64,000 nt of DNA, from contig NC_042998.1 in NCBI RefSeq assembly GCF_006345805.1, forward strand, positions 37,386,001 to 37,450,000, written 5' to 3'. The notes under the pieces are model-generated. The model saw only the letters and a list, made by a program, of their open reading frames with translations, ran no database searches and was not told the DNA's origin. Shown piece by piece: positions 4,227 to 51,264 of the stretch. The position numbers were made by a program, and so were the translations under genes. Source of the stretch: Octopus sinensis (Eukaryota). Each line of letters begins with the position of its first letter. Within the stretch, counting starts at the first letter, position 1.

Positions 4227-4254
4227 GTTGAATTTTCTGCTGCTTAAAATAAAG

Positions 4255-4262
4255 TATAAGAT

Positions 4263-7531: not shown

Positions 7532-7602
<71 letters not shown>

Positions 7603-11700: not shown

Positions 11701-11953
11701 ACCAATATTTAGCCTACTATACTCTTGCAGCAGGGTAGCATATTTTTCTGTTAAGCAAGTTTAAAATTTGTAGTCAGCTCTAGCGTTGCCTGTGTACAAT
11801 TGGGTGCTCTTCCTCTTATTTCCTCTTCATGCTGACTAATGAATATTAATGTGTGTAGTAATTTTACTGGAAGCAGCGTCCTGTAGATCCGATATAAGAA
11901 TTGGCTATCGATCCAATGATCAATTGTACTTCGGTAATTTATATCTAAAAAAA

Positions 11954-12535
11954 AGTGGCGACCTAACAGAAACGTTAGCACGGCGGGCGAAATGCGTAAC
12001 TGTATTTCGCCTGCCGTTACGTTCTGAGTTCAAATTCCCCCGAGGTCGACTTTGCCTTTCATCCTTTCGGGATCGATTAAATAAGTACCAGTTACGCACT
12101 GGGGTCGATATAATCGACTTAATCCATTTACTTGTCCTTGTTTGTCCTCTCTGTGTTTAGCCCCCTTGTGGGTAGTAAATAAATAGGTATTTCGTCTGTC
12201 GCTGTATTCTGAGTTCAAATTCCGCTGAGGTCGACTTTGCCTTTCATCTTTTCGGGGTCGATTAAATAAGTACCAGTTACGCACTGGGGTCGATATAATC
12301 GACTTAATCCGTTTTTCTGTCCTTGTTTGTCCCCTCTGTGTGTAGCCCCTTTTGGGTAGCAAAGAAATAAGTATTTCGACTGTCTTTACGTTCTGAGTTC
12401 AAATTCCGCCGAGGTCGACTTTACTTTTCCTCATTTCGGGGTCGATAAATTAAGTACCAGTTGCGTACTAGAGTCGACCTAATCGACGCGTACCCTCCCC
12501 CAAATTTTGGGCCTTGTGCTTAGAGTAGAAATGAA
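11954..12535 (+). mobile_element. SINE family A trimer: head + (unit + Tx1-like tail) x2 + terminal unit, 184-bp period
   Basis: A box tggcagaa/B box gagttcaaattcc; core gtcgactttgcctttcatcctttcggggtcgat three times; spacers 12121-12186 and 12306-12370. Confidence 0.9.
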
Positions 12536-12587
12536 AATTTATATCTAAAAAAATCTGCAGAAAGTAAAAGGACCGATGGCATCCGTA

Positions 12588-16744: not shown

Positions 16745-16773
<29 letters not shown>

Positions 16774-16775
<2 letters not shown>

Positions 16776-17004
16776 TTCTTAATTGCCCACAAGGGGCTAA
16801 ACATAGAGTGGACAAACAAGGACAGACAAAGGGATTAAGTCGATTACATCAAACCCAGTGTGTAACTGGTACTTGATTTATCGACACCGAAAGGATGAAA
16901 GGCAAAGTCAACCTCGGCGTAATTTGAACTCATAACGTAACGGCAGACAAATTACGGCTATGTATTTCGCCCAACGTGCTAACGTTTCTGCCAGCTCGCC
17001 ACCT
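16774..17004 (-). mobile_element. Monomeric chimeric SINE A ending in the Tx1-like tail
   Basis: Head + unit + tctatgtttagccccttgtgggcaattaagaaat running directly into (AT)n. Confidence 0.85.
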
Positions 17005-17793: not shown

Positions 17794-17826
<33 letters not shown>

Positions 17827-18042
17827 TGACGGATGTGATGTCGTTTCAGCTCCGAAGGTAATCATTTATTTTGACTATTTAAAAGTGTATATTGACAAAC
17901 ATTTTGTGCTTAAAAGTTGTGCAACAACATCCACTGTAAACCTTTGATAAATATCGACACAAAATTTTGCCCCTTGTGGGCAAAATTTAAAAGAAAAAAT
18001 TCTCATAGCCTTCGTGGTTTCATTTAGCCATTTTATTTCCAA

Positions 18043-20180
18043 AATGGCCACTGGCCACCACGAGGCTGAGTTGCAAGTCAAGCGTGACGCAGAAACAGAA
18101 AAACAGGATGCTCTGTTAGCATACGCCGAACCTGACAACTCCACCACCATCAACAGCAACAAATACAAAACAAAGGTCGCAAGGCCAAGCACCGTCAACA
18201 CCATCAGTGAGTCCACCACCACCACCACCAACACCATGGCAGAATCTGCTACTAAAACTACTATCCCTACTAAAGATATCGCCACCAATAACAACACCAA
18301 CATCACCATCACCGCCACCAAAGACCGTGCCGTCAATGCTACTAATACTACCAACACCACCGCCGTCACCAAGAACGACAATAACAACAACAACAACAAC
18401 AACGACGACAACAACAATTCCCTTCAACCACTGCTCACTCCATCACCAACAAGTGAAAAAATAACGACGACAAGCAAACGAAATGCCGAAATTTGCGCTA
18501 ATGCAGGACTAAATTACGCAGGCAATTGTCCACCCCTTGCTAGTTGCATAATCAGCAACCACAAACCTACAACCCACACCCCTGCCATCAACACCAACAC
18601 CACCGGCAGTAACAACAATAACAAAACAACAACAAACTTCGCCGAGGCGATAAAAGAAAAGGTAACAAAAGTTTCGTTTACTACACAACAGATTAAAGAT
18701 TGCAGAAATCTTATTACAAATCAAAACGGAAAAATACTCTTACACATACCTCAGCACATACTGAATGAGGAGAAAAAAAAGACAATTGTATATAAAATCA
18801 CAAATAAAGAAACAAAAAGTCCAGAAAAGGCAAGCACAGACAAAGTCGAAAAGTGCTTACTGGGGATACAAGGATTGTGTGACTTGGGCGAACAAGTTCG
18901 CACACGTACAAGTGGTTTTTCAGAATGAAGAGTTGGCGAAGAAATTCTCAACGATAACCCTTCATTATGATGAACTAACGTTGACATCGAGTTACCTCGG
19001 CCAGAAGGTGACGAAAGTCATTATCAGTGGTGTCCCCCAAGTGACTACAACACTGTGGATTACATCCGCCTTAACATCCGAAATGGAGGACTTAAACATC
19101 CTAGATATCGGTGTTTCGGAAAACAAGGACTGGCTGGGAAAGAGAATAGAGTTCCTCTTCCACATAAGTCAAGAGGACATAAATAAAATCCCCACCCACG
19201 TACATCTTGAGGATGGCCGCAAGTTATACGTAGTAGTCGAGGGCAGAAGGCCACGATGCTATACATGTGGCAGTGAGGCACACCTCAAAAAGGAGTGCAA
19301 ATCTGCCGCAAAATTACAACAACAACAACAACAGCCACAGGAAAAATCACAAAAGCCAGGATTATTGCCCACACCACAATATGGACAGCTAGTCAAGAAG
19401 CTGTATGCAGAAATGCAGGAAAAACAACAAAGAACAAGCCAACCCAACCAAACAACACCAACACCAGCGCCAAGAACAGAATCATCACCACCAACAACAA
19501 ATAAACCAATTCCAACACCAAGAACGACAGCAAAACCCAAAGGAACAGAAAAACAAAGAAAACACACACAAACTGATCCCCCATCCCTTATACCGCACTC
19601 AACACACACAAACACTCAACAACCAACAACAACGAAAACAACAACACAACCACTTACACAGACATACATAGAAGCCCACAACATACCCCTACCCCCTTCT
19701 GATTCCTCAGAAATTTCGTCGGAAGACGAAACCAGTGAGGAATGGCAAATAGCTACAAAAAGAAGGAAAATAAAGAGCAGAAACACAACCAAACCAAATG
19801 CAAACACGAACAAAGCAGGGGGAAATACATCTCCCGAAGACATTTCAAAACCCAACGCAAACAACAGCCACACCAACACCACAAAAACATATACAGCAAA
19901 CATGCTCACAGCCATAGACACCAAAAACACAAATTTGATGGAATACATCCAATCAAAAACAAACATAACAGAAGATGACATAAAAACAAACAATCACCCA
20001 TACACAACACCACCAGACCACATCAAAATATTACACATCTCCAAAAGTCTGCACCACACACTCAAAGGCATTTTCCCCAGTGCGGTTGGTAAATGCCAAA
20101 AATATCTCACAAAGAAACTGTACTGGGATCTTCTCGAGGACAAACCAACGGAGGAGAAAGCAAAAACTTTCGAGCAGTAA
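18043..20180 (+). pseudogene. LINE ORF1 (Thr/Asn-rich N-terminus, RRM-like region, one CCHC knuckle), frameshift near 18870
   Basis: ORFs 18014-18928 and 18765-20180 overlap and join; CX2CX4HX4C at ~19260. Confidence 0.8.
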
Positions 20181-20211
20181 GTAACCCTCTGTATTCTAAT
20201 TCATTAGAACT

Positions 20212-22800
20212 ATGATCAAGATTGGTTGTGTAAATGCGCGTGGCTTGGGGTCCCCTGGAAACAAGGGTACCTCTTAAATGACATAAAGTCACATAAGTTA
20301 GAAATCATAGCCATAAGCGAGACCAGACTCCACAATCTGCGGGCCCTAAAGACCATGTTTGGCGGACAGTTCAACATTTATTTTTCCCCCTGTCTGCCGA
20401 GAATGGGCGGTAGTGGCACCGCGGTACTTTTTCACAAGAGTCTGGATCTCAAAGTAAGGACAATATTCGTAGACCCGGAGGGTAGACTGGTCGTCCTGGA
20501 TGTCGACGGCAGCAATGGGTGCGCTTTTCGACTCGTATCAGTTTACGCACCGCCCTTAACAGGTCGGGCGGATTTCTTTCAACGTCTAGAAGTTTTCTTG
20601 GGAACGTCTCGTCCTTTACTCTTAGTGGGGGATTGGAATGCTACCTTGGACGCGCATGTAGACTACGTGGGTAGAGATAGGAATAGACGGGGATGCAAAT
20701 GCCTCAGAGACCTGCTCAGACGCTTTCAACTGTCTGACAGGTTCCGACTAGACCACCCGAATGCGCCAACGTGGACATGGAGCAACCGCATCGGGTCGTC
20801 GAGATCGTATCTAGATAGGATACTGTGTAGGACAGTAGATAGAGATAGCATAGGATGTCCACATTTCCACATAGTCAGCTACACGGATCACAAACTTGTG
20901 ACATGTACGCTAGACTTAGGTAAGACACTTAGGCAGGGTCCCGGATACTGGAAACTAAACGCGTCTTTCCCATCGAGACAGGTTTTCAGAGACCGGATTA
21001 GCACACTAGTAAAGAGGGCTTTGACGGGAGCCATCATCAACAACAAATGGTGGTTTGCCCTTAAGAGAGCAGTAAAAGCAGAAGCGATTAGGTACAGCAA
21101 CGCACTAGCCATAGATAGAAATAGAGTAGAGGGTGAGCTAGTTAAGAAGCTAGAAGAGGCAATTAGAAGCGGCATCGCATCCGACGTTTTGGCGGCGAGG
21201 TTGGCCCTCGACCAACACTTCAACGCCAAACACGAAGGATGTGCTGTCAGAGCTAGGATGCGTGCTCTAAGGAACGAAGGTGTTGGAGCCGCGAGAGAGG
21301 CCCGGGTGGAAGAGGCGCAACAGGGCAACAAAGCCACCATTCGGTCACTGGTAGATGAACAGGGGCGCGAATTGCTCGAGCCAAGTAAAATGTGTGAGGC
21401 CTTTCAGCAGCATTTTGCCCGACTGTTCGGGACGAGTGGAGGGCAAGAACGTAGGGTGGACTTCAGTGCCTACCTACATAGCCTACCACGACTCTCGGCA
21501 AGAAAGGCAGGGTGCTGCGAAGGTGCCATCACGGCGGCGGAAGTGCGGGAAGCGATGGCAGAATGCTCGAGGGACAAATCACCGGGTTTGGATGGTCTAC
21601 CCTACGAATTTTACTATTGTATGCCAGACTTGTTTGGAGACGTCTTGGCAGCGGTATACTGCAACTGGCAGCAAAACGGGAGCATACCCGGTTTTGTGAG
21701 TCGAGGAGCTGTAACACTGCTGAAGAAAGATCCAAACAAGGGAAACATTATAGATAACTTTAGGCCAATCACTCTGCTCAATGCCTGACCGTCGTACCTT
21801 GTCCCGACCCTACCATCACCAAACTACAACGCATCCTCTTTCGCTTCTTGTGGAAAGGATGCGTCCCGATGGTCAGGCGATCCATTTGCTGTCAACACCC
21901 GTTAAAAGGAGGGCTGGGCATGCCGTGGTTGATGATGCGCAGACACGCGCTGAGACTGCGACATCTCTGGCTCTATGTAGACGACGGTGAACAGGTGTGG
22001 TCGCCGTTTGTGAGGCACGCTTTCCCGCAGCTCGTCTCCATGACCGAACTGCAGTCGTGGATCAAAAAGAGGCCGAGGAAGGGCGAATGGCACCGCGATT
22101 GTCGCGTTGCTCTCAAGCAACTCTGCCGTCCTGGGTCGACCTTAAGTGACTTCAACACAACCAAAGCATTCTATAGGGGTTTAGTGGAGGGGAGGTACGA
22201 CGACGAGCTCGGGTCGAACCTGGACGTCGACGAGGAGTACCTGACCCGCCTGTTCAGGACGACTTTCGGGCCAGGGCCCATGGACAACTTCCAGAGATCC
22301 CTGGCCTGGCAGTGCTACCGAGAAGCGCTACCCGTTCGGGATAAGCTCTACAGACACGGCTCGAGAAACACGGGGCCGACCTGCCCGAGATGCGGGCAGA
22401 GCGACGAAACCGTTCTGCACGCACTCGTTCAGTGTCCAACAATTTCCGACCTGTGGGCTTGTGTCGAACAACTGCTGTCACGTGTGGGACGAGTCGGTTT
22501 ATCAGCTGAGTCTATCGTCAATATTGTCACGCCTCCTTCCTTCAAACGGGAAGGAAGAGCTATTTTCATCATCTTGTGGCTATGGCGAAAGAATGTATCT
22601 GGTGGACGCGTCTGAAAGGATTGGAGACAAACACTTTCCTCTCTGGTCAATCTCTCATCAACTTCTTCAAGTACCACTTGAAAAGGAAAGTGAGAGTAGA
22701 GAGGCAAGTTTTGTCTAGCGAATGTTTTAAAAAAAGATGGGTGAATGTAGCAAGAATGGCACGTATGAATGACGAAGCCACCTTGAGCATAGTCCTATGA
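20212..22800 (+). pseudogene. LINE ORF2 (APE + RT remnant + CCHC), lacking ~850 bp of RT
   Basis: Stops at RPITLLNA (21784) and resumes at sequence matching 25717 of copy 3. Confidence 0.88.
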
Positions 22801-23134
22801 ACCCAGAAATCGAAAACAGAGAGTTGCTTATTTGCAAAAAAAAAAAAAAAAAAAAAGAAATATAAAATGTGACTTCATTGACCGAGGTTACCGTGGTCTT
22901 TTCCGTAGGCTTTTCTTTCCACGGGTAAACCTCACCTGTCCTCCCCTTTACACTTCATATTGACATTTCTGTGATAACGATCCCTATTGATCAATTTTTT
23001 TTCCCCCCCTTTTTTGTCCTCTTTCTCTCCTTTTACGATCCCTTTTTTTTTTTTCTAACCCTTCAAAAGAAAAGCTCTACCTTGTAATTTGTTCTATCTG
23101 TGTGCAGCCCTGTGTGGCTAATAAAGAAACATAC

Positions 23135-23168
<34 letters not shown>

Positions 23169-23169
<1 letters not shown>

Positions 23170-23440
23170 CGCCTATCCGCTGCTTTAACTCCTGTAAGTC
23201 CTGTGGAAACGAGGATATGAAGACCTTGTCCTTCTGATACCCCTAAATGAAAATGTCGCAAGGTGTCAGGTCGGTGGACCTGGGAAGGGTGAGCAGACCA
23301 TCAATGGCAAATCATTCACCTCAGCACAGACAATCCAGTGAGTTCTAGAAGATGCTGGTTGAGGTAATCTCGTACTTGCCTATGCCCATAGGGTGGGGAC
23401 ACTCTTTTACTGCATAAAGTTAGACACCTCTTCTTCTCAC
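23169..23440 (-). pseudogene. Tc1/mariner-type transposase fragment
   Basis: Minus strand reads PPYGHRQVRDYLNQHL..PRSTDLTPCDIFI*GYQKDKVF..PQDLQELKQRI. Confidence 0.7.
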
Positions 23441-23549
23441 TGGGGCAACAACCAAATAGACAGCATTGAACCCATTCATTTTGAATTACTCTGTATATCA
23501 CCTTTTAATTCTGTTTCTAATCAGCTTTCTTCTACAGATTTGTTTTCAG

Positions 23550-24031
23550 GTGTGAAGGTTGGCTTGCAACAGACAGTTATGCTTCGACCATCTACAATAT
23601 CTCCTGCAACAGATCAAATGATCATCCCATTTTTAAAAGCCGATTTGTAGACCATATTCAGCACTCGTTGAGCGATGGACACCTGTGGTTCTCTACTTAC
23701 GTGCACCCGTGCTATTCCACATTCAGCCGCACTCAAAGAATCGTTTGCTGTGCAACAGTCCTCTATCTTACAATGATAACTAATGCCATGTTTTCTCCTT
23801 TTGACAATAGACTCAAAGCAGAGAACGATCTTACAATTGGTCCAATTCGTTTAAATCTTCGCCAAATAGCTGTTTCTATCCAAAGCATTGCGATCACAGT
23901 GCCGTCTACATTATTCTTAGTGGCATGCTTTAAAGATTCGAAGCCGGACGGAACTTGCTGTTGTTGTAAGAAGAAACCCAAAGAAGATGAAGAAAATATA
24001 GATGATGATGATGATGATGATGATGACGGTG
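23550..24031 (+). CDS. Polycystin-1-like (PKD1L/REJ family) internal exon: end of PLAT domain and following TM segments
   Basis: tgttttcAG acceptor; open frame CEGWLATD..LSDGHLWFSTYVHPCYSTFSRTQRIVCCATVLYLTMITNAMF..; G|GTGAG donor at 24032. Confidence 0.8.
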
Positions 24032-24034
24032 GTG

Positions 24035-24504
24035 AGCGAATGTTTTAAAATAAGATGGGTGAATGTAGCAAGAATGGCACGTATGAATGACGAAGCCACC
24101 TTGAGCATAGTCCTATGAACCCAGAAATCGAAAACAGAGAGTTGCTTATTTGCAAAAAAAAAAAAAAAAAAGAAATATAAAATGTGACTTCATTGACCGA
24201 GGTTACCGTGGTCTTTTCCGTAGGCTTTTCTTTCCACGGGTAAACCTCACCTGTCCTCCCCTTTACACTTCATATTGACATTTCTGTGATAACGATCCCT
24301 ATTGATCAATTTTTTTTTCCTCTCCCCCTTTTTTTTTTTTTTTAACACCCCCTTTCTTTTGTCCTCTTTCTCTCCTTTTACGATCCCTTTTGATCGAAAC
24401 TCCCCCTTCCTTTTTTTTTTTTTTTTTTAAACCTTCAAAAGAAAAGCTCTACCTTGTAATTTGTTCTATCTGTGTGCAGCCCTGTGTGGCTAATAAAGAA
24501 ACAT
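24035..24504 (+). mobile_element. Tx1 family 1 3'-end fragment (copy 2)
   Basis: Nearly identical to 22717-23133; followed by (TCTA)4. Confidence 0.92.
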
Positions 24505-24521
24505 ATCTATCTATCTATCTA

Positions 24522-27155
24522 AGGGCTAGAACGTAGGGTAGACTTCAGTGCCTACCTACATAGCCTGCCACGACTCTCGACAAGAAAGGCAGGGTGCTGC
24601 GAAGGTGCCATTACGGCGGCGGAAGTGCGGGAAGCGATGGCAGAATGCTCGAGGGACAAATCACCGGGTTTGGATGGTCTACCCTACGAATTTTACTATT
24701 GTATGCCAGACTTGTTTGGAGACGTCTTGGCAGCGGTATACTGCAACTGGCAGCAAAACGGGAGCATACCCGGTTTTGTGAGTCGAGGAGCTGTAACACT
24801 GCTGAAGAAAGATCCAAACAAGGGAAACATTATAGATAACTTTAGGCCAATCACTCTGCTCAATGCAGACCTGAAAATTTTGACAAAGGTGTTAGCCAAG
24901 AGGTTGGCGCTTGTCATGGAGAAACTGGTGGTCGACAACGCACAAACGTGCGCCGTGCCGGGCCGGAGCATCCATGACAACCTCCATCTGATGCGCTACA
25001 TCATAGACAGGGTAGTTAACGAACCTGGCATGGGTGGGGCCCTGATCAACTTGGATCAATCGAAAGCCTTTGATAGGGTAGACCATCGATACTTGGAGGC
25101 AGTCCTGAGAGCGGCTGGTTTCGGTCCCGTCTTCCGCGGCTGGATAGCTGCCTTGTACAGGGGCATCCGTTCGGTAATTCGCGTAAATGGACATCTATCG
25201 AGACCTTTCGACATTGCACGTTCGGTCCGTCAGGGATGCCCCCTCTCGGCGCGCTTCTATACGTATTGACTCTTGAGCCACTACTGCGGAAGCTGGCGAC
25301 TCTGAGGGGCATCCCGCGAGAATTAGGATGCGGGACGAGCGTGTCTGCATACGCGGACGACGTCACCGTCATAGTGTCAAGCCACGAGCACATCGAGCGG
25401 GTCGGCGAGACACTGAAAGACTACGAAGCGGTGACAGGAGCAAAAATCAACCGGGAAAAAGTCAGGGGCTTGCGGCTCGGCACCTGGAGAAGCAAGCCCA
25501 TGCCGTCCACCAGTACCTCCGTCGGGACGCTGGACAGACGGCCCGGTTGAGTTGCTCGGGGTCTGGTTCGGTCCGGACCTCCAAATGGAGAAGAACTGGA
25601 ACCAGATAACGAGTAGGGTGGTCACTCTCGCCCAGCAATGGGCCGAGAGGAAACTGTCCCTAAAAGGTCGGGCGGAGGTGGTGAACGCGTACATCGCGTC
25701 CATCATCTACTACCGCCTGACCGTCGTACCTTGTCCCGACCCTACCATCACCAAACTAGAACGTATCCTCTTCCGCTTCTTGTGGAAAGGATGCGTCCCG
25801 ATGGTCAGGCGATCCATTTGCTGTCAACACCCGTTAAAAGGAGGGCTGGGCATGCCGTGGTTGATGATGCGCAGACACGCGCTGAGACTGCGACATCTCC
25901 GGCTCTATGTAGACGACGGTGAACAGGTGTGGTCGCCGTTTGTGAGGCACGCATTCCCGCAACTCGTCTCCATGACCGAACTACAGTCGTGGATCAAAAA
26001 GAGGCCGAAGAAGGGCGAATGGTACCGCGAGTGTCGCGTTGCTCTCAAGCAACTCTGCCGTCCCGGGTCGACCTTGAGTGACTTCAACACAACCAAAGCA
26101 TTCTATAGGGGATTAGTGGAGGGGAGGTACGACGACGAGCTCGGGGCAAACCTGGGCGTCGACGAGGAATACCTGACCCGCCTGTTCAAACGACTTTCGG
26201 CCCGGGACCTATGGACAACTTCCAGAGATCCCTGGCCTGGCGGTGCTACCGAGAAGCGCTACCCGTTCGGGATAAGCTCTATAGGCATGGCTCGAGAAAC
26301 ACGGGGCCGACCTGCCCGAGATGCGGGCAGAGCGACGAAACCGCTCTGCACGCAATCGTGCAGTGTCCAGCAATTTCCCACCTGTGGGCTTATGTCGAAC
26401 GACTGCTGTCACGTGTGGGACGTGTCGGTTTATCAGCCGAGTCTATCGTTAATATCGTCACGCCTCCTTCCTTCAAACGGGAAGGAAGAGCTATTTTTAT
26501 CATACTTGTGGCTATGGCGAAAGAATGTATCTGGTGGACGCGTCTGAAAGGATTAGAGACAAACACTTCCTCTCTGGTCAATCTCTCATCAACTTCTTCA
26601 AGTATCACTTGAAGAAAAAAGTGAGAGTAGAGAGGCAAGTTTTGTCTAGTGAATGTTTTAAAAAAAGATGGGTGAATGTAGCAAGGATGGCATGTATGAA
26701 TGACGAAGCCACCTTGACTATGATTCTATGAACCGTAAATTAATACAGAGAGTTGCTTATTTGCAAAAAAAAAAAAAAGAAATATAACATGTGACTTCAT
26801 TGACCGAGGTTACCGTGGTCTTTTCCGTAGGCTTTTCTTTCCACGGGTAAACCTCACCTGTCCTCCCCTTTACACTTCATATTGACATTTCTGTGATAAC
26901 GATCCCTATTGATCAATTTTTTTCCTCTCCCCCTTTTTTTTTAACCCCCCCTTTTTTGTCCTCTTTCTCTCCTTTTACGATCCCTTTTGATCGACCCCCT
27001 TTTCTATTTTTTTTTATTTTTTTTAAATTTTATTTGTTATTTTATTTTTTATTTTTATTTATTTATTTATTTTTTTTTTAAACCTTCAAAAGAAAAGCTC
27101 TACCTTGTAATTTGTTCTATCTGTGTGCAGCCCTGTGTGGCTAATAAAGAAACAT
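24522..27155 (+). mobile_element. Tx1 family 1, 5'-truncated copy 3 with complete RT domain (frameshifted)
   Basis: KSPGLDG, RPITLLN, LDQSKAFDRV, VRQGCPLS, YADD, CPRC..ET..H; starts right after (TCTA)n of copy 2. Confidence 0.93.
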
Positions 27156-27359
<204 letters not shown>

Positions 27360-29212: not shown

Positions 29213-29217
29213 AGTTG

Positions 29218-38937: not shown

Positions 38938-39439
38938 AAGGTGGCGAGCTGGCAGAAACGGATTAAGTCGATTATATCGACCCCACTATGTAACTGGTAC
39001 ATATTTCATCGACCCCGAAAGGATGACCTCGGCGGAATTTGAACTCAGAACGTAGCGGCAGACGAAATACCTATTTCTCTACTACCAACAAGGCGCTAAA
39101 CACAGAGAAGGCAAGCAAGGACAGACAAACGGATTAAGTCGATTATATCGACCCCAGTGCGTAACTGGCACTTTTTTAATCGACCCCGAAAGGATGAAAG
39201 GCAAATTCGACCTCGGCGGAATTTAAACTCAGAACGTAGCGACAGACGAAATACCTATTTATTTACTACCCACAAGGGGCTAAACACAGAGATGACAAAC
39301 AAGGACAGACATAGGTATTAAGTCGATTACATCGACCCCAGTGCGTAACTGGTACTTAATTTATCGACCCCGAAAGTATGAAAGGCAAAGTCGACCTCGG
39401 CAGAATTTGAACTCAGAACGTAACGACAGACGAAATACC
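38938..39439 (-). mobile_element. SINE family A multimer (3 units, 2 Tx1-like spacers), 3' part of the SINE interrupted by the LINE; fused to an inverted head at 38938-38960
   Basis: Same units and spacers as 11954-12535. Confidence 0.85.
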
Positions 39440-42400
39440 AATTTCTTTATTGCCCACCGGGGGCCAAACATAGATATGGACAGTACAACTGATGGGATCA
39501 GTGAATCGATATGATTTTACATAAATGTGACATCAAAAATAAAATACAATACATAAAAAATCGAATGGAATACACAGTACAAAAACAATACAAATGAAGC
39601 GATGATCAAGTTACGCTCCGATCCCACAAGCCCCGATCTACCGCTGATACCTTTTTATTTTTCCTTTTTTTTTTTTTTTCCTCGTCTATTCACACGGTTC
39701 CTTGCACGCACAACACTCGTGCAACATACTTCCATCTCTTTTGGAACGTACACTCTGACAGACACCTCTTCTCCAGCCACAGTTTCCTTTTCAAATGAAA
39801 GAAAAAAAGGATCGTAAATTGTCACCAGAGATAAAGTTGCCTGTCTTAATTCCTTTTATCCTAGTATTCCATACAGCCTCTTTTGCTATTGCTACAACCG
39901 TGAGAAAACAATTCTTACCTTCGTTCGTTAGAACTCCCGGTGGGTCAATTTTTATAATTGACTCAGTCGACAGCCGTACTCTTCCTTCGCCGGACAACAG
40001 ATGTTCAGCATAAGCCCACATTTCAGTTATCTCCGGACACTGAACAATAGCGTGAGGGACGGTTTCCCTGTCCCCACCGCATCTTGGACAGGTCGGCGAC
40101 TGACGTTTACCATGTCTTGCGAGCTTATCCCAAACGGGCAAGGCACCTCTGTAGCATTGCCAGGTTAAGGACTTTTGGAAGTTGTCCAACGTTCTCAACC
40201 CGAATGTACGATGAAACAAGCTGTCCAGTTGAATAAATCCGAGACCTAGAGTCGACCCCAGGCCATCGTCGCATTCAGACTCTACCAACCCACTATATAA
40301 AATCCGTGTGGAACCCCCACCGCTGGCGTTGCCCGAGCGCCGGAACAGCAAGAGGGCCTTACGGCACTCTTTATGCCACTCACTCGACCTCGGTCTACGA
40401 GAACACCAGGCTTCCTGTTCGCAAAAACTCTTGAACTCAGGGAACATTTGTCTGGCCAGCGGAGACCACACCCGTTCACTATCCAGGAGAATCCAGAGGT
40501 GCCTCAACCTCAACGCATGTCTGCGCATCATTAACCAAGGCATCCCTAAACCTCCATTTAAAGGCTTTTGACAGCAGACAGAGCGTTTCACAAGTGGCGA
40601 CCTGCCCTTCCACAAAAAGCGAAAGAGCTGTCTCTCCAACCTGATCAACCACGAATCCGGACAGGGCACGACAGTCAGGCGGTAGGTAATGACCGATGCG
40701 ATAAACACATTGGCCACTTCCGCCCTCCCTTTCAGGGATAGCCACCGCCAAGACCAAGTCTTGACTACTGCAGCCACCCTGCTCAATACCTCCGTCCAGT
40801 TCTTCTCTATCTGGAGGCCTGGTCCAAACCAGACTCCCAGCAACTTAACCGGTCCCTCCGTCCAGCGCCTAACAACACTGTCTGAAGGCATCGACTTGCC
40901 AACCCAGGTGCCGAGCTGCAAGCCGACCGACTTTTCCCGGTTAATCTTTGCTCCTGCTACCTCCTCGTAAGCCTCAATAGTCTTACCTACTTCACGTAGG
41001 CGTACCACTGTGGTTACACTGATAGTGATATCATCCGCGAAAGCCGTAACAAACTCCTCTAGTCCTGGTTCTCTCGGGATGCCACTCAACCTTTGCAGTA
41101 ATGGCTCGAGAGCCATCACATACAAAAGTGGTGAAAGCGGACATCCTTGACGAACCGAGCGTCTGATGCAGAACGGCTTCGAAAGGAAACCGTTCACCCG
41201 AACTATCGAGTCAATGTTGTTGTGGTACAAAGCGATAAACCACCTGAGGAAGCCAAGGCCCAGGCCAAACCGCGCAAGTACAGTCGCTAGGTATCGATGG
41301 TCAACCCTATCAAAAGCTTTAGACTGGTCCAAATGCACCAATGCCCCACCTTTGCCAGATTTATTACCAAACCTCTCTATGGTATAGCGAATAAGATGGA
41401 GGGTATCCTGAATGGTTCTGTCTGGGATGGCACATGTCTGTGCCTCCCCGACTATACCATTCGCGACACGCGCCAACCTTTTTGCTAGAACCTTGGCCAA
41501 AATCTTCACTTCTGCGTTTAACAGAGTGATGGGCCTGAAATTCTCTAGAACGTCCCCCTTGTCCGGGTCCTTTCTGACCAACGTCACTACTCCCCGGCGC
41601 ACAGATCTGGGGATAAACCCATTCTGTTTCCAGTTCGCGTACACGTCAGTCAGTAGTTGCCCGAACAAGTCTGGCATACATTTATACAGCTCGTACGGAA
41701 GACCATCAAGTCCCGGTGACTTACCCGCTTTACAATCGGCCAAAGCCTCCATCACCTCCTCAAGTGTGATTGGCCCTTCGCAAGACTCCGCATCCGACCC
41801 CGAGAGGCACGGCAGCCCGGTAAGAAAGTCCTCGAGGGCTCTCCCACCACCAGGACCGCCGTCACCCCCGAACAGCTGGGCGAAGTACTCCCGAAAGACC
41901 TCACACATTTTCTCGGGTTCGTTTATCAAGACACCATTTTGATTCGTCAAAGACCGAATAGAGGAACTATTTCCTTGCCGAGCTTCCACCACTCGGGCCC
42001 ATCCAGCGGCTTTGATTCCTTCACTTCCCATTGCACGTAACTTAGCTCTGGTAATACTTCCCATGTGGTGGGCTTCAAGATGCTGGTTTAACTCCAGTCT
42101 TTTCACCCTCGCTTGGTCTGTATTACCAGTCCTCCAGGCTTCTTCTAGTTCCTTAACTAGACCATCTCCTATTTTACGTCCCTTCTTAGCTAAACTTATG
42201 CTAAACCTAATAGACTCATATTTGATGGCTCTTTTTAGGGCGTACCACCATTTGTTATTAATGATGGTACCTGTTAATGCCCTCTATATTAACATCTTGA
42301 TCCGCTTTCTGTACTCCTCAATCGCCAAAAGGGACGTATTAAGTTTCCAGTAGCCAGATCCCTGTCTATGCAACTTATCTACCGTCAGTTTACAGGTAAC

Positions 42401-44794
42401 CATCTTGTGGTCACTGTAGCTGACTAGAAAAAACTGTGGACACTCAACTATGGACTTATCTTTTTCTCTAATTAAAATCCTATCTAGATATGTTCTGGTA
42501 GACCCGTCACTATTTGACCACGTCCACTGTGGAGTGTTCGGGTGCTCCAACCTATATGGATCTGCTAGCTGAAATTGACTTAGCAGATCCCGAAAGCCTG
42601 TGTTACATTTTCTGTTCATGTTCGAGTTTGAGCCAACACAATCTGTGTGTGCTGCACATATTGTATTAGAGTCTCCTAACACTACTAGTGAATGCGACGT
42701 GGCTAGGAACTTTCCTAGGCCACGAAAATATTCAGTTTGCGGGCCAATAATGTTTGGTGCATAAATAGCGACCAGCCTGATTGTCTTGCCACAACTGAAT
42801 GTCAAGTCGAGAACGACCAGCCTGCCTTCTGGGTCAGAAAAAACCAACTTTTTCTCGGCTACCCGGTTTCTTTTTAGTAGGACCAACACCCCACCCCCAC
42901 CTCCCGCCCGACTCGGAGAAACGTATTTCTCGTAGCCGTTCAGGAGGGGAGAGCAGATCTCTTGGCCCCTTCACCCGGGTTTCCGTTGCAACAATTACAT
43001 CCAAATTTCTCGACCTGATGTCATTCAGAAAGCGTCCTTGCTTCCAGCTTGACAACAGGCCATGAACATTTAAACAACCAATGTGAATAGCCATCACTTA
43101 CCTGTTTAATTAGGATTGTCCGGTGGAGGGGGACCCTCCACCTTTTTTTTATCCAGGGTCGGAGGTGGACGGTCTTGGGAAATAGATTTGTCAAAATCCC
43201 GTCTCACCACCGACACAGAATTATCAGGTGGAGGGGGAATCTCCACCTTTTCCTTTTCTCGCGGGATCGGAGCTGGTAATCCATGAAATATCGACTTGTT
43301 AAAATCTAATCTCAATGAAGATACAGTCTTTCTGTACTTATTTTGTAGAATTCTATAAGTCTTATTTGAGACTTCATATATGTCGTATTGATAAATTCCT
43401 CTGAAAGGTTATCAATTTTTTTTACAGTCTTTATGAGTTGAATGTCTCTCATGAGCTCAGTATCTTTAGTGTATACGGCTATTATGCTTTTTCTTCTTTT
43501 TCTCTTCTGGCAGTCTTTTTGGTCGTTGTTCTGTAGTAGTCGCCGCTCTCGGCTGGGTTGCTGGTTGTATTTTTCTTTTGTTTGTTGTTTTTTTCTCATC
43601 TGTTTCTTCTTTATCTTCTTCCTCTTTGTCTTTTTTCTCCTCTTCCTCCTCTTCTTCATTTTCCTTGCAGTTCCTTCGAATGTGGCCTAATTGACCACAT
43701 AAAAAACATCGAGGTTTTCGGCCCTCAACAAACACCACGAGGTTCTCTCCCCTACCTCAATTGTCTCAGGAATTGTTTGAATTATTTTAGGGTCCGCTTG
43801 AATGAGAAGATTAATTGTTTTACCATCCCAGCGTGGGTTTTCCGTAGCGGTAGCCTGGAGGAGAGTAATTTTTTCTACCTCTTTGATTAGGACTGCCGCC
43901 AACAACCACATAGGTTCGACCTCTGGCGGGACCCTTGTAATTTTTATTCGCGACGTCCTCATCCCCATATAATAGGGTATTAACTCCACGTCGTTCGTTT
44001 TCAACGTTTCCACTGAGTTCTTGTGTGCTATTTCTTTATTGGTGAACCTTACTTCCACCGTTCCGAATTTTTTCCTCTTCTCAGAAATACTACGTCGCCC
44101 AATATTGGCTTTAAGCACTTTTCTATTTTCTCTTCTGACATTCTTTCAATTTTTCTATTTTGTAGACAATATGTTTTGAAAATTATTGTTTTTTGCTTTT
44201 CTTCCTGTAATAACTTTTGCGGAGGTTCAATTTTCACACTGTTGTCATTTATTTCCATCATTTTGCTGTATTTCATAATTTCGCTTTTATTCGTCGACAG
44301 TATCTGGGTTCCACCCCCAGCAGCCAACGCAAAACTTTTTTTTTCCATTTTTTGGTTCTATCTGGATGCTAGGCACATCAATTATTCTCTTCGACACAAT
44401 GCCTTTGTTCTCTGGCAAAGTCGGAAACTCTTCTGCTGAAAGTTCTGACGAGCTCTCAGACACATCTCCAAAAATATCAAATATATTATCCTCTCTGCTA
44501 TTCTTCTTGTAGCGGGGGAAACCCCTATTTCCTTGTCTGTAGTTGGCTCCTCGCCGGACATGTATTTCCTCCTCTCAACAGGAGAAACAAGTATTTCTGC
44601 TCCAACGGTAGGCTCCATGCTAGACGACATTCTTCCCCCCAAAGGGGGAATGAACAACGCGTGCTACCACAAGCACTAAGTGTTTTCAATTGAAAACTCC
44701 AACAGTTAAGTTATTCAACAGTTTAACAAGAAACAACAGTTGTTAACAAATATAACACCACGAAACAGCAATTCTTACTTCACGACACATTGTG
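39440..44794 (-). mobile_element. Tx1/L1-clade LINE family 2, apparently full length, inserted in SINE A with ~16-bp TSD
   Basis: ORF1 from ~44630 with CFLCGQLGHIRRNC; APE from ~43097 (IGCLNVHG, LGDSN, YLDRI, YSDH); RT ORF 39791-42106 (KSPGLDG, QGCPLSP, FADD, CPRC..ET..H); flanks cgacagacgaaatacc (39424-39439) and cggca-acgaaatacc (44795-44809). Confidence 0.92.
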
Positions 44795-44856
44795 CGGCAA
44801 CGAAATACCGCTAAGCATTTCGCCCGGCGTGCTAACGTTCCTGCCAGCTCGCCGCT
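44795..44856 (-). mobile_element. SINE A head (5' part of the interrupted SINE)
   Basis: Minus strand gcggcgagctggcaggaacgttagcacgccgggcgaaatgcttagcggtatttcgttgccg. Confidence 0.88.
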
Positions 44857-45704: not shown

Positions 45705-46005
45705 AAGATGATGAAAGGCAAAGTCGACCGCGGGGGAATTTGAACTCAGAATGTAGCGTCTGGTGAAATACCTATTTCTTTACTACCCACAAGGGGCTAA
45801 ACACAGAGAGGACAAACAAGGACAGACAAACGGATTAAGTCGATTATATCGACCCCAGTGCGTAACTGGTACTTAATTTATCGACCCCGAAAGGATGAAA
45901 GGCAAAGTGGACCTCGGCGGAGTTTGAACTCAGAACGTAGCGGCAGTCGAGATACCGCTAAGCATTTCCTCCAGGGTACTAATGATTCTGTCAGCTCGCC
46001 GCCTC
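45705..46005 (-). mobile_element. SINE A dimer: head + unit + Tx1-like spacer + truncated unit
   Basis: Spacer 45770-45833 followed by the gtatttc target. Confidence 0.85.
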
Positions 46006-47992: not shown

Positions 47993-50126
47993 GTAACTGA
48001 GTCAGTAAATAAAATGTAAGGAGATATTTATAACTAGATTCGATTATGCAAATTCTTATTTTGCTTCTTCGAGATCGAATATGGCTATATTACAGAATAA
48101 TTTACTTTGACGAAATTTCTTGACAAATATTAATGAAATGTTAGTTGATGCACCCAGCTTGTTGTATGGATAGATTGTTGATTGACTCAATCATTCGTTT
48201 CGTTCTCTTGTTTACCAAATAACTTTGAAGTGCTTAATATTCACTCCTAAATTCCATCATAATAATATTGGGATCTTTTCACTTTGATCGGCAGATTTAA
48301 AAAATAATTTCTTTGTAACTAAACACTTTTAAACTTCGTATACTGGTTGAATGTGTTACATAAAATATATTTTTCTCTTGGCTTTCCTGAGAAAATTCTG
48401 TATTTTGTAAGCTATTTGTTGTTAAATTTCTTGCATTTCGGCAATTTCTACCAGTATACGAAGTTTAAAAGTGTTTACTTACAAAGAAATTATTTTTTGA
48501 AATCTGCCGGTCAAAGTGAAGAGATCCTAATATTGTCTAGGTATGTTACCAATATGTTCTAAGTATATGAAACCATCTGCGTTCGTATGGTGATATAAAG
48601 AAACACTAGAGAATACTTAAATTTTACCAGCATTCAAATGTTACTTTGTATTAGAGTGAAGCTTTATGAAGCTGAAAAATGAAATGTATCCTCCTCGTAA
48701 AAGAAAAATACAAGTAGACTCTTTGAACTGTCAAGACAATATAATGCGTGACTCTAATTCTACAGCTACCCACCAGGTAAAGTAAAAGTATAGATTTTAA
48801 TTGTTGTAAGGCAAAAGACGGACGTAGAGACTTGACGTAATATTTATTGGTAGAAAAAATTACGAAATTGACGACAAAGGATTCTGAAACGGTCATTAAC
48901 CCCTAAAGTGCTGGGATTTGCACTTACATAGCATGGACTCCTGAGCACGTTTTATGAAAATGAAACGATCATGCACACAAAAAAAAAAACGCAAAAATAG
49001 TCAAAATATCTTCTTAGTATATAATGGTGGCAAGTTTTACTTCGCAAAAGTCATTAGTTGGCCTATCAGTCCTCTTGCATTCTGTGGAGTATCGGAGCGT
49101 TTGAGTGACATTAGACCCCAACAAACGTCCATAAATTAAATGTACCTGTAGTGGTCTATGAAGCTACATTGTTGAATGATTTCCCTTGCAAGGAAGATAA
49201 TAGGGTAACCTCCCTTTTCTAAGTTTCTCGAAGCATCTGTATCATGAGATGTTATTCTTAATTATTCAAGAAGCTTGGCGTTTCTCTTGTAAGTTTATCG
49301 AATGTCTAGCATTCCATTAATATAAATAGCTTGTTAACCCTGTTCTTCGCTTCTTAGTCGATTAGACTTAGAGCCATTCACGTCATTGCTATGTCCGCTT
49401 ATTTCTCTACGCTACATGGCTTAATGCCACCACTTAGCTGTTATTTCCACATTTTCTATCTCTGAACTTTCTTGCATAGATTCCTTCATTCAACTAGATT
49501 CTACATTTTGATTATGTATCATCATCAACCAGTAAATAAAATATATTTTTATGTAGTAAATATATAGGTCTTGAATTCATTCTTCATCTCTATATGAACT
49601 CTTGCAATAATATACACGCAGCCACATCAACACCTGGTACTAACTATATATAACCACTACACATCTACCTGGCACAGGATCGTGGCCTGTCGACCTGTAC
49701 CTGACGGCCACGAGTGTGGCGCGTTGCACTTTATGTCTCAAGCGATGTCACATTATTTGCTGTATATATATATTGTCCTGCAACTGAGAATTTTCTTTTC
49801 TGCACTCCTGAGAAGACTCTTACTGCTATTTCTTGCACCTCTTTATGTTCTGAATTCAAAATTCCGCTGAGATCGAATCTAGCTATCATTCTTTCACGTT
49901 CATGGAATAAAGTAGTGGTTGCACACTGGTGCCAATCTAATCAACTTCACACTTCCCCAACTTTCAGGTCTTCTTTAAATTTCACGGAAGTTCACATTTC
50001 ATTTCATACATTCGGGCTCCATAAATTTCAGGCTTTGTGTTTATATTAGAAAGGATTATAAACCCACCTCTGCTACACATTTACGCGTTCCCTCTCTATG
50101 ACATGGTGATACTTTAAATATCTTAA

Positions 50127-50462
50127 GGCGGCGAGCTGGCAGAATCATTAGCACGCCAGGCGAAATGGGTAGCCGTATTTCGTTTGCCGTTACATTCTGA
50201 GTTCAAATTCCTGCAAAGGTCGAGTTTGCCTTTCTTCCTTTCGGGGTCGATTAAATAAGTACCAGTTACGTGTTTAGCCTCTTGTGGGTAGTAAAGAAAT
50301 ATGTATTTTGTTTGTTGTGACGTTCTTAGTTCAAATTTAGCCGACCGAGGTCGACTTTGTATTTCAACCTTTCGGGTTCGATAAATTAAGTTGAGTGCTG
50401 TGGTCGATCTAATTGACTGGCTCCTTTCCACAAAATGTTGGGCCTTGTGCCTAGATTAGAAT
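50127..50462 (+). mobile_element. SINE A dimer with partly deleted Tx1-like spacer
   Basis: ..accagttacg|tgtttagcctcttgtgggtagtaaagaaat atgtatttt.. then unit with original tail. Confidence 0.8.
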
Positions 50463-51264
50463 AAGATATTTTAAATATCTATATTTTCATTTATCCTATA
50501 GTATAACGCTATTTAACATTCAGATATGTCATATAACGTATTCATTTATCTGCATGATTCCAGGCTACGATTTCCCTGCGCTTTACGCCACAATTCCACT
50601 AAGAAAAACACACCGTTATCGTATTGTGAGAAATCCTTATAATTTAAATCACTCCAGTTCGGCTAAAGATAAAACATGTTGATGTAAGTTGATGCAGCTT
50701 GCTTTGCTGCAAGTACAACTTATTTCTGTTCGCAGGTTTTTACAGATACGTAAGCCTTGCGGTGTGTAGACAACATTTCGTTTGCTGCAAACATTATTTT
50801 CCTCTTGTATCCAGCGAATAAAAAACAATGCATTTTCAGAGTTAATTATATATATGTCGTTTGTTTTGAGTCATTTTACTTCCATCAGGCCAGATAGCAT
50901 TACACTCATCAAAAGAGGCACGGAATTAGTCGTTTTTGCATGGTTTTTGTAGCCTTCTGCAATAGAATGTTTTTTATTTCGTATTTGGACAAATATCTGT
51001 AATTTATAGCGTTAACATCTTAAGCTGGTGCATTTTACTGGAAATTATTCACTCTCAAAGAACAGATATTTGAATTTAAAGATGTCTCAAATTCATATTA
51101 TTATCTTGCGCTTCATGGAGTCGTTTTTGCAGGCTTAAAATTGAAGAGAGTAGTCGATAGTAGTAATCACCTAGCCCGAGTGAAAAAGCTTCCGCTCGTA
51201 TAACCCATTTACAACCAACTACCACAATTACGTATGTGCCCCAGGTTTATGATACATAACGCTT

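What the first reader, a model, noticed from the sequence alone, without database searches (positions are those of the whole stretch)
11954..12535. Self-regenerating SINE arrays built from a SINE-LINE chimera
Seen: arrays have one head, then 184-bp repeats of [SINE body + ~65-bp spacer], then a body with the ordinary tail. The spacer (tctatgtttagccccttgtgggcaattaagaaat at 16.8 kb) closely resembles the 3' ends of both Tx1 families here (family 2 tctatgtttggcccccggtgggcaataaagaaat; family 1 tctgtgtgcagccctgtgtggctaataaagaaac). Bodies preceding a spacer carry diagnostic bases (ttacgcac, gatata) that differ from the terminal body (ttgcgtac, gacct), arguing for insertion of a distinct subfamily rather than local duplication. 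A stand-alone head+body+spacer monomer exists at 16774-17004. Inference: the chimeric SINE borrows the Tx1 tail, is inserted at the same GTATTTCG site, and its cDNA anneals to the identical target overhang so the head is lost; each event restores an A/B-box promoter and a fresh target, letting arrays grow.
Basis: partly seen in the sequence, partly recalled or inferred. Interest (0 to 1): 0.8.

Follow-up and report, generated by a model that had tools for sequence, protein, structure and literature searches.

The report
SINE arrays grown by self-targeted retrotransposition
A short mobile element in this octopus-like genome carries the tail of a site-specific LINE whose landing site lies inside the short element itself, so copies stack head-to-tail behind a single promoter half; this is a new twist on a known LINE/SINE partnership.

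Summary
Window 11954-12535 is one tRNA-like SINE head, two 184-185-bp units (117-bp body plus about 67-bp spacer) and a third body with a different tail. An 18-bp target-site duplication flanks the whole.

Three more arrays of the same design lie in the window. A profile built from the spacers hits, outside SINEs, only the 3' termini of the four L1/Tx1-type LINE copies (E about 5e-6 each), end to end.

A full-length family-2 LINE (44800-39441, minus strand) sits between a head and an array exactly at GTATTTCG, with its own roughly 15-19-bp duplication. Family 1 does not use this site; it targets (TATC)n.

Internal units are 88-94% identical across arrays. They are only 84-86% identical to their own terminal unit. 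Heads (69-85%) and terminal units (about 81%) are older than the internal units.

This rejects local duplication and argues against copying from one composite master. It favours repeated in-situ insertion of a LINE-tailed subfamily at a site inside the SINE.

Head loss by homology at the 5' junction is plausible but only inferred. Pol III termination at the spacer is not predicted.

The closest precedent is SINEU-3/Tx1-Mar (Kojima 2015). Evidence comes from one 64-kb window only. Verdict: a new variant of a known kind.

The parts
11936..11953 (+). 5' copy of the 18-bp target-site duplication (aatttatatctaaaaaaa) flanking array 1
   Evidence: Read directly; identical to 12536-12553.
11954..12001 (+). 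Array 1 head: 5' half of the tRNA-like domain with an A-box-like ttagcacggcggg. Its 3' part is the 5' arm of a 14-16-bp hairpin.
   Evidence: hairpin; MFE z-score -5.1.
12002..12186 (+). Array 1 internal unit 1 (B type): GTATTTCG, B box GAGTTCAAATTCC, 117-bp body, and a LINE-like tail at 12119-12186
   Evidence: 4.9% from the B consensus.
12187..12370 (+). Array 1 internal unit 2 (B type), with LINE-like tail at 12304-12370
   Evidence: 6.5% from the B consensus.
12371..12535 (+). Array 1 terminal unit (A type): a body with the ordinary tail ...ccaaattttgggccttgtgcttagagtagaaatgaa. Presumed to be the original host SINE together with the head.
   Evidence: 84-86% identical to its own internal units.
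12536..12553 (+). 3' copy of the array 1 target-site duplication
16773..17004 (-). Stand-alone head+body+LINE-like-tail monomer, inserted in (TA)n. Its tail, gggcaattaagaaat, is closest to LINE family 2.
   Evidence: E 2e-20.
44809..44856 (-). Head belonging to array 2, now separated from its units by the LINE
44790..44808 (-). Upstream copy of the LINE's target duplication: GTATTTCG plus T-TGCCGC(-AC), about 15-19 bp of SINE body start
   Evidence: local alignment to the SINE consensus; the extension has chance p about 0.016.
39441..44800 (-). Full-length L1/Tx1-type LINE family 2. It has an ORF1 region with a CCHC knuckle, an APE ORF at 42889-42284 and an RT+zf-RVT ORF at 42106-39791. Its 3' end is ...tatgtttggcccccggtgggcaataaagaaat. 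The exact 5' end is uncertain within the duplication.
38961..39438 (-). Array 2 units directly 3' of the LINE: B unit 39438-39255, B unit 39254-39071, and a last unit 39070-38961 that has a 13-bp deletion and no tail
45708..46003 (-). Array 3: head 46003-45956, B unit 45955-45772 (3.3% from the consensus), then a unit truncated at 62 nt (45771-45708)
50124..50463 (+). Array 4: head 50127-50174, B unit 50175-50302 (with an internal deletion joining body position 95 to the tail), and an A-type terminal unit from 50303. Flanked by the duplication gata(c/t)tttaaatatct.
17827..27157 (+). LINE family 1, shown for comparison. One full-length copy ends at 23134, followed by two 5'-truncated copies ending at about 24506 and 27157. 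They lie head-to-tail, each bounded by (TATC)n/(CTAT)n. The 3' end is ...ctgtgtgcagccctgtgtggctaataaagaaac.

Best explanation
The arrays were built in place by repeated, site-directed retrotransposition.

A SINE subfamily ('B') has replaced the ordinary tail with the roughly 50-nt 3' end of a target-specific L1/Tx1-type LINE. That end is a small GCCC/GGGC hairpin followed by AATAAAGAAAT. The partner LINE's endonuclease nicks resident SINE copies immediately 5' of GTATTTCG. This site is the 3' arm of the long hairpin between the A-box half (head) and the B-box half (body) of the tRNA-like domain.

Reverse transcription of a B RNA starts at that nick. A roughly 15-19-bp target duplication that begins with GTATTTCG is made. 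Because the incoming cDNA contains the same sequence at its own head/body boundary, the 5' junction is resolved by homology. This could be annealing of the duplicated target end to the cDNA, or RT stalling at the hairpin. Either way the incoming head is not retained.

The product is head + new unit + old unit(s). The old head's A box is now paired with the new unit's B box, and the GTATTTCG site is present again, so the locus can be hit again.

Shown here:
- the anatomy of the arrays;
- the LINE origin of the spacer;
- a full-length LINE at the same base with its own duplication;
- internal units that are younger than, and unrelated to, their own flanking head and terminal unit.

Inferred:
- which LINE copy or family supplies the enzyme;
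- how the 5' junction is resolved;
- whether the head-proximal site is the only target;
- whether any of this is still active.
For: 1. Structure: four arrays have identical unit boundaries.

2. Spacer origin: a profile of the spacers hits only the four LINE 3' termini outside SINEs, E about 5e-6 each, end to end. The same tail motif is shared by LINEs and SINEs of Argonauta hians and by a cephalopod LINE in a JGI metagenome contig. Its 4-bp stem keeps pairing through a C-G to G-C swap.

3. LINE at the site: full-length family 2 (APE, RT, zf-RVT; best PDB match human L1 ORF2p, 1e-44) lies between a head and a B array at exactly GTATTTCG. SINE sequence is duplicated for about 15-19 bp.

4. Unit relationships: B units are 88-94% identical whether in the same or in different arrays, and 84-86% identical to their own terminal unit. 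Two B variants coexist within array 2.

5. Relative ages: heads of the four arrays are 69-85% identical, against 86-94% for the adjacent B units (pooled Fisher p = 6e-8; 2e-6 without CpG-type changes). The terminal units of arrays 1 and 4 are 81% identical.

6. Natural control: the B-tailed copy that landed in (TA)n kept its head.

7. Related behaviour: family 1 in this window forms head-to-tail arrays at its own target, (TATC)n. Tx1-clade target specificity, and tandem SINEU-3 insertions made with Tx1-Mar, are documented (PMC4494074).
Against: - There is only one LINE-at-site example and only four arrays, all from one 64-kb window. No other DNA of this species could be retrieved.
- Arrays 1 and 4 are flanked as wholes by a single target duplication. 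This is also what whole-array transposition would give.
- Arrays 1 and 2 show the same order of tail variants (aaaTaaatag unit, then aaaGaaata unit), and their second units cluster together (66% bootstrap). That could reflect movement of a two-unit RNA.
- The first 19 nt of neighbouring units in array 1 differ at about 5 positions, so they do not show the identity expected of a fresh duplication.
- Bootstrap support for a B clade on 117 nt is below 50%.
- The array spacers (gggtagtaaagaaat) are not identical to the family-2 tail (gggcaataaagaaat), so the true partner may be an unseen family.
- The head-versus-unit divergence test uses non-independent pairs and assumes equal mutation rates in the two parts.
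Confidence: 0.65

Rival explanations
1. Composite multimeric SINE. Head-B-(B)-A arrays are themselves the transposing unit. Pol III starts in the head, reads through the terminator-less B units, and the ordinary tail's LINE partner inserts the whole array at a new locus.
For: Arrays 1 and 4 are each flanked as a whole by one target duplication. The least-mutated B units contain no T4 run. Arrays 1 and 2 share the order of tail variants, and their second units cluster together.
Against: Between arrays, heads (69-85%) and terminal units (81%) are much more diverged than the B units lying between them (86-94%). Copies of one master should be equally diverged throughout. The unit number varies (1, 2, at least 2). 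Array 2 has a 5.4-kb LINE at the junction with its own duplication, which is an in-situ event. This model also does not explain why the unit boundary equals a LINE 3' end.
Confidence: 0.12
2. One-step chimeric cDNA. During a single retrotransposition, the reverse transcriptase copies an ordinary SINE RNA up to the hairpin at GTATTTCG, then jumps to the 3' end of a B RNA once or twice, and finishes on a head. The array is born complete.
For: Single whole-array target duplications. A strong 14-16-bp hairpin exactly at the switch point. Template jumping is a known property of non-LTR reverse transcriptases (discussed in PMC4494074).
Against: The head would then come from a young B RNA, yet heads are markedly older and more divergent than the adjacent units. 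The LINE at the same junction has its own roughly 15-19-bp duplication, so this junction is demonstrably a genomic integration site.
Confidence: 0.1
3. Local tandem duplication. Unequal crossing-over or replication slippage between SINE bodies turns one chimeric insertion into a small satellite-like array.
For: SINE-derived tandem arrays and satellites are known in bivalves and squamates (PMC11481361, PMC10702118). The 117-bp bodies offer homology for misalignment.
Against: There is no excess similarity within arrays: A1 u1-u2 is 89.1% and A2 u1-u2 is 89.1%, against 88-94% between arrays. Internal units are not closest to their own terminal unit. Different B variants sit in one array. No B/A hybrid units are seen at the diagnostic column.
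Confidence: 0.06

Closest known systems
SINEU-3 with Tx1-Mar LINEs in crocodilians (Kojima 2015, PMC4494074)
   Same: A SINE shares the integration site of a target-specific Tx1-type LINE. It has a long (16-bp) target duplication. Tandem SINE copies are explained by sequential insertion at the regenerated site. LINE and SINE copies are found at the same position.
   Different: There the target is an unrelated DNA transposon (Mariner-N4_AMi), tandem copies are complete and sandwich the duplication, and the heads are snRNA-derived. Here the target lies inside the SINE family itself, between its A and B boxes. Inserted units lack a head and reuse the resident one.
Microsatellite- and multicopy-gene-specific Tx1-clade LINEs (Kibi, Koshi, Keno, Tx1L; summarised in PMC4494074)
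   Same: APE-type LINEs with sequence-specific integration. Family 1 in this window behaves this way: head-to-tail copies in (TATC)n.
   Different: Those targets are microsatellites, snRNA/5S genes or a DNA transposon. A tRNA-derived SINE as the target was not found in the literature I could search.
R2/R1-type site-specific elements and their short non-autonomous derivatives
   Same: The 5' junction is helped by homology with upstream target sequence. Transcription depends on the target's promoter (as discussed in PMC4494074). The same insertion site is hit repeatedly.
   Different: They use a restriction-like endonuclease (R2) and rDNA targets, and they do not grow tandem arrays behind a Pol III half-promoter.
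SINE-derived tandem arrays and satellites (PMC11481361 bivalves; PMC10702118 squamates)
   Same: Head-to-tail SINE-derived repeats, some within a single pair of target duplications.
   Different: Those are attributed to recombination or duplication. Here the unit boundary is a LINE 3' end abutting an integration site, and the units are not local copies of each other.

Membership tests
tRNA-derived SINE | Internal Pol III promoter: A box and B box at tRNA-like spacing | tested here: met
   The A-box-like ttagcacgccggg lies in the head at about position 20, and the B box GAGTTCAAATTCC at position 75. The match is by eye to the consensus; transcription was not tested.
tRNA-derived SINE | Head recognisable as a tRNA | tested here: inconclusive
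   ARAGORN and Rfam call no tRNA in the SINE copies. However, the 5' GGCGG pairs with the CCGCC after the B box, acceptor-like, and there is a long central hairpin.
tRNA-derived SINE | Dispersed copies with target-site duplications and a LINE-related 3' tail | tested here: met
   At least 12 copies or fragments in 64 kb. Duplications flank arrays 1 and 4, monoA and monoA2. The tail matches LINE 3' ends.
Tx1 clade of L1-superfamily LINEs | APE endonuclease + RT + C-terminal zinc-binding domain, with a CCHC knuckle in ORF1 | tested here: met
   Pfam Exo_endo_phos, RVT_1 and zf-RVT. CFLCGQLGHIRRNC in the ORF1 region. The best solved relative is human L1 ORF2p, 1e-44.
Tx1 clade of L1-superfamily LINEs | RT phylogeny placing the element inside Tx1 rather than L1 proper | not tested
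   No reference Tx1 RT set was available. Database relatives carry no clade names.
Tx1 clade of L1-superfamily LINEs | Sequence-specific integration | tested here: met
   Family 1: 3 of 3 copies lie in (TATC)n. Family 2: 1 of 1 lies at the SINE GTATTTCG site with a duplication. Relatives integrate at CTAT... or (ATT)n. Sample sizes are small.
Target-specific SINE mobilised by a Tx1-type LINE (SINEU-3-like) | SINE and LINE occupy the same target position | tested here: met
   Seven B-tail junctions and the family-2 LINE 3' end all abut GTATTTCG.
Target-specific SINE mobilised by a Tx1-type LINE (SINEU-3-like) | Independent insertions rather than hitch-hiking or duplication | tested here: met
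   Units are not closest to their neighbours. Heads and terminal units are older than the units between them. This rests on 4 arrays only.
SINE-derived satellite (local amplification) | Neighbouring units more alike than units from different loci | tested here: not met
   89.1% within arrays against 88-94% between arrays.
Fixed composite (dimeric or trimeric) SINE family | Constant architecture and equal divergence of all modules between copies | tested here: not met
   The unit number varies. Head and terminal modules are far more diverged than the internal modules.

The most novel reading that the evidence does not exclude
A SINE lineage has made its own family the landing pad. A LINE-tailed subfamily is directed by its partner's endonuclease, and by RNA/target homology, into the hairpin between the A and B boxes of resident SINEs. 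It drops its own head at integration and reuses the resident half-promoter. Any SINE copy can therefore seed a growing, Pol III-transcribed, terminator-less array. This would be a retrotransposition route from dispersed SINEs to tandem repeats, and a 'safe-haven' strategy that may have contributed to the octopod SINE expansion.
Probability: 0.5. Interest if true: 0.7.

Novelty: new variant of a known kind. Interest (0 to 1): 0.58.

Why it matters
Octopod genomes are unusually rich in SINEs: about 12% of the O. vulgaris assembly (PMC13282606) and roughly 40% of annotated TE content in octopuses (PMC8967140). How these SINEs are mobilised is poorly described.

A SINE/LINE pair whose target is the SINE itself would be a harmless landing site for both partners. 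It would explain clustered and tandem SINE annotations, and it would give a concrete non-recombinational path from interspersed to tandem repeats. It also predicts unit-number polymorphism that could serve as markers.

For annotation, such arrays should not be scored as a separate 'long SINE' family or as satellites.

Tried and rejected
1. More DNA of the same species.
- Three protein searches found no hit above 66% identity: family-2 RT, family-1 APE, and a Penelope-like RT. The species is therefore absent from the protein collection.
- A junction pattern scanned against metagenome contigs gave 95 single chance matches. None contained the SINE.
- Two scans of prokaryotic genomes and one of viral contigs found nothing.

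2. Related loci. Argonauta hians (L001) and JGI metagenome contigs (L003, L004) confirm the shared LINE/SINE tail motif. They have other targets, so they do not test the GTATTTCG site.

3. Growth polarity. Divergence of each unit from the B consensus is 3.3-7.4%, with no head-to-tail trend.

4. Target duplication between neighbours. Identity of the first 19 nt is seen in array 2 (1 difference) but not in array 1 (about 5 differences), so this is inconclusive.

5. NJ tree with bootstrap on 117-nt bodies. The topology separates B from A units, but support is below 50%.

6. Rfam and ARAGORN on the SINE gave no tRNA call.

7. Literature. Word searches and searches for exact sequence strings found no description of these arrays.

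8. GTATTTCG alone as the target. The two non-SINE occurrences at 47294 and 47323 are empty, but n = 2.

Full report
**What is there**

The window is AT-rich, repeat-dense eukaryotic DNA. Its LINE proteins are closest (about 60%) to those of the octopod Argonauta hians. I could not identify the species.

At 11954-12535 Tandem Repeats Finder reports a 185-bp period, 2.6 copies, score 727. Reading the sequence gives:
- a 48-bp head (11954-12001);
- two units of 184-185 bp (12002-12186 and 12187-12370);
- a third body with a different tail (12371-12535).

Each unit begins with GTATTTCG and carries a B-box-like GAGTTCAAATTCC about 26 nt later. The head carries the A-box-like ttagcacggcggg. The 3' part of the head and the first 16 nt of the following body form a 14-16-bp hairpin, ACGGCGGGCGAAAT/ATTTCGCCTGCCGT. 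GTATTTCG is therefore the 3' arm of the central hairpin of the tRNA-like domain. The whole array is flanked by a perfect 18-bp target-site duplication, at 11936-11953 and 12536-12553.

**Other copies in the window**

- Array 4 (50124-50463, +): head, one B unit with an internal deletion, and a terminal unit with the ordinary tail. It is flanked by gata(c/t)tttaaatatct.
- Array 3 (46003-45708, -): head, one B unit, then a truncated unit.
- Array 2 (-): head 44856-44809, GTATTTCG, a 5.4-kb LINE (44800-39441), then two B units and a tail-less unit (39438-38961).
- A stand-alone head+body+spacer copy sits at 17004-16773 (-) inside (TA)n.
- Two ordinary-tail monomers lie at about 35171-34966 (-) and 38269-38486 (+).
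- Several older, diverged SINE copies carry GCATTTCG at the equivalent position.

**The spacer is a LINE tail**

An nhmmer profile of six spacers was searched against both strands of the window. After the SINE copies themselves, it returns exactly four hits with E about 5e-6:
- 39478-39441 (-);
- 23081-23130 (+);
- 24453-24502 (+);
- 27104-27153 (+).

These are the 3' termini of the four LINE copies, and in each the end of the profile coincides with the end of the LINE. The next hit has E = 0.02.

The LINEs encode an APE endonuclease, a reverse transcriptase and a zf-RVT domain. There is a CCHC knuckle upstream. The best solved relative is human L1 ORF2p at 1e-44.

The shared motif is a 4-bp stem (GCCC...GGGC) followed by AATAAAGAAAT. 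It recurs at the 3' end of a related LINE and of SINEs in Argonauta hians, and in a cephalopod LINE on a JGI metagenome contig. The stem stays paired through a C-G to G-C exchange between lineages: 7 against 7 sequences, though effectively one event.

'Tx1' is a reasonable label given the domain set and the target-specific behaviour. I did not test clade membership by phylogeny.

**The same site is a real integration site**

Family 2 ends ...gggcaataaagaaat-tg and is followed at once by GTATTTCG and a B unit. At its 5' side a SINE head is followed by GTATTTCG and then T-TGCCGC(-AC). SINE body sequence thus continues for about 15-19 bp before the LINE starts (the extension has p about 0.016 against random window 14-mers).

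That is a target duplication beginning at GTATTTCG. Its size is similar to the 16 bp reported for SINEU-3/Tx1-Mar (PMC4494074).

Family 1 does not use this site. Its full-length copy and two 5'-truncated copies lie head to tail, each bounded by (TATC)n/(CTAT)n. This is the behaviour known for microsatellite-specific Tx1-type LINEs. The relatives in Argonauta integrate at CTAT... sites (one SINE has the duplication ctatttcaagg), and the metagenome LINE integrates at (ATT)n.

**Insertion or duplication?**

- Over the 117-bp body, internal units are 89-92% identical to one another whether or not they share an array. They are 84-86% identical to their own terminal unit.
- Over whole units, A1 u1-u2 and A2 u1-u2 are both 89.1%. 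Between-array pairs run from 88.0 to 94.0%.
- One alignment column separates all eight spacer-bearing units (A) from all four ordinary-tail units (G).
- Array 2 contains two B variants, gataaattaag and gattaaaaaag.
- An NJ tree groups all spacer-bearing units apart from the ordinary-tail units, but bootstrap support is below 50% on so short an alignment.

Local duplication of the terminal unit, or recent duplication of neighbours, is therefore not supported.

**In-place growth or transposition of whole arrays?**

If arrays were copies of one composite master, all of their modules should be equally diverged between loci. They are not.
- The four heads are 69-85% identical pairwise, while the B units directly next to them are 86-94% identical. 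Pooled, that is 226/287 against 761/832 matches (Fisher p = 6e-8; 2e-6 after removing CpG-type changes; the pairs are not independent).
- The terminal units of arrays 1 and 4 are 81% identical.

Heads and terminal units thus look like old, independently inserted SINEs into which younger B units were later placed.

The copy that integrated in (TA)n, where the target offers no homology, kept its head. This is the pattern expected if the head is lost only at homologous targets, but it is a single case.

**Points that cut the other way**

- Arrays 1 and 4 have one duplication around the whole array. This fits an old host insertion, but equally fits whole-array transposition.
- In both array 1 and array 2 the head-proximal unit has the tail variant aaaTaaatag and the next unit has aaaGaaata. 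The two second units cluster together with 66% bootstrap. This may be a temporal succession of source variants inserting at the head-proximal site. It may instead be movement of a two-unit RNA.
- The latter is conceivable because the least-mutated B units contain no run of four or more T. Pol III starting in a head is predicted to read through the spacer.
- Divergence from the B consensus (3.3-7.4%) shows no clear polarity.
- The first 19 nt of neighbouring units are nearly identical in array 2 but not in array 1.
- The array spacers differ from the family-2 tail at a few positions, so the actual partner may be a family not present in this window.

**Mechanism: inferred steps marked**

- Shown: a LINE-tailed SINE subfamily; a LINE of the same tail group integrated at the same base with a long duplication; younger units sitting between an older head and an older terminal unit.
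- Inferred: the endonuclease nicks just 5' of GTATTTCG.
- Inferred: reverse transcription of a B RNA starts there. A read-through RNA whose tail is followed by GUAUUUCG could even pair with the nicked target.
- Inferred: the duplicated 15-19-nt target end pairs with the identical stretch in the cDNA, or the RT stalls at the hairpin, so the incoming head is not integrated.

Homology-assisted 5' junctions and reliance on the target's promoter are discussed for R2 and for SINEU (PMC4494074).

Each event leaves an A box (old head) in front of a B box (new unit) and recreates GTATTTCG, so the locus remains a target.

**Comparison with what is known**

The closest precedent is Kojima (2015). There, SINEU-3 and Tx1-Mar LINEs share a site in a Mariner transposon, with a 16-bp duplication and tandem SINE copies explained by sequential insertion.

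The present case differs in three ways:
- the target lies within the SINE family itself, between its promoter boxes;
- the inserted units are headless;
- the arrays share one head.

SINE tandem arrays in bivalves and squamates are attributed to recombination or duplication, and that model fails here. I found no description of these arrays in the searchable literature, by words or by sequence strings. Repbase entries and subscription papers were not searchable.

**Verdict**

Its mechanistic details are unproven, and it is wrong about family 1 and about Pol III termination.

I rate it a new variant of a known kind, of moderate to good interest. The main limit is that all evidence comes from four arrays in one 64-kb window.

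Noticed in passing
window 17794-27355 (+): LINE family 1 forms a head-to-tail array: one full-length copy and two 5'-truncated copies. Each is bounded by (TCTA)n/(TATC)n, so this is a microsatellite-specific LINE stacking at its own regenerated target.
   Followed up: partly
window 38940-38960: The distal end of array 2 does not end in a tail. It joins, through a 5-nt overlap (cgttt), to an inverted 21-nt SINE 5' end (cgtttctgccagctcgccacc). This is a rearrangement or aberrant integration that I cannot explain.
   Followed up: partly
window 45405-45707: The second unit of array 3 stops after 62 nt. About 300 bp of unrelated AT-rich sequence follows, then a 5'-truncated SINE with a third tail type (...gctggctttgtgccaaaatttgaaacc). 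It could be an insertion or two separate elements.
   Followed up: no
window 29217-29290 (-): An apparently intact tRNA-Arg(ACG) gene (ARAGORN; Rfam 56 bits), embedded between (TA)n tracts.
   Followed up: no
window 52589-56561 (+) and 6230-7537 (-): Penelope-like retroelement remnants. There are RT fragments and two GIY-YIG-like ORFs (IYSLTCSGCQEQYIGQ / IYVIKCSGCHHDYVGS). The RT at 6230-7537 has 55-65% identical relatives in sharks, corals, sea urchins and snails.
   Followed up: partly
window 191-490 / 2784-3083 and 582-919 / 3923-4258: Long direct repeats at 94-100% identity, spaced 2.6 and 3.3 kb apart and surrounding ORFs with no Pfam match. This could be a recent segmental duplication or LTR-like repeats.
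   Followed up: no
window 17965-17982 (+): The 3'-tail hairpin motif (gccccttgtgggcaaaat) also occurs in the 5' UTR of the full-length family-1 LINE (nhmmer E 0.02).
   Followed up: no
window 34966-35134, 38317-38486, 12488-12535 and older copies (11541-11700, 51276-51423, 61950-62106): The 'ordinary' and older SINE tails also contain a ccttgtgcc...agaaa/tttgaaac motif that resembles the LINE 3' hairpin region. Most SINE families here may therefore depend on LINEs of this same group.
   Followed up: partly
L003 (JGI 3300045642), L004 (JGI 3300037598), protein P0062: Cephalopod-type LINE sequences occur on environmental metagenome contigs, and in a protein labelled as a Herbaspirillum MAG (54% identical to the LINE C-terminus). 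This is most likely host DNA or contamination in those data sets.
   Followed up: partly
L001 9616-11309 (Argonauta hians): Argonauta SINEs with the same LINE-type tail cluster next to a (CTAT)n tract. They include two complete copies in direct tandem (10840-11054 and 11055-11304), each with its own head, and one copy with the duplication ctatttcaagg.
   Followed up: partly
window 31633-32102 and 5002-5265: Two further tandem repeats of unknown origin: 244 bp x 1.9 copies and 122 bp x 2.2 copies.
   Followed up: no
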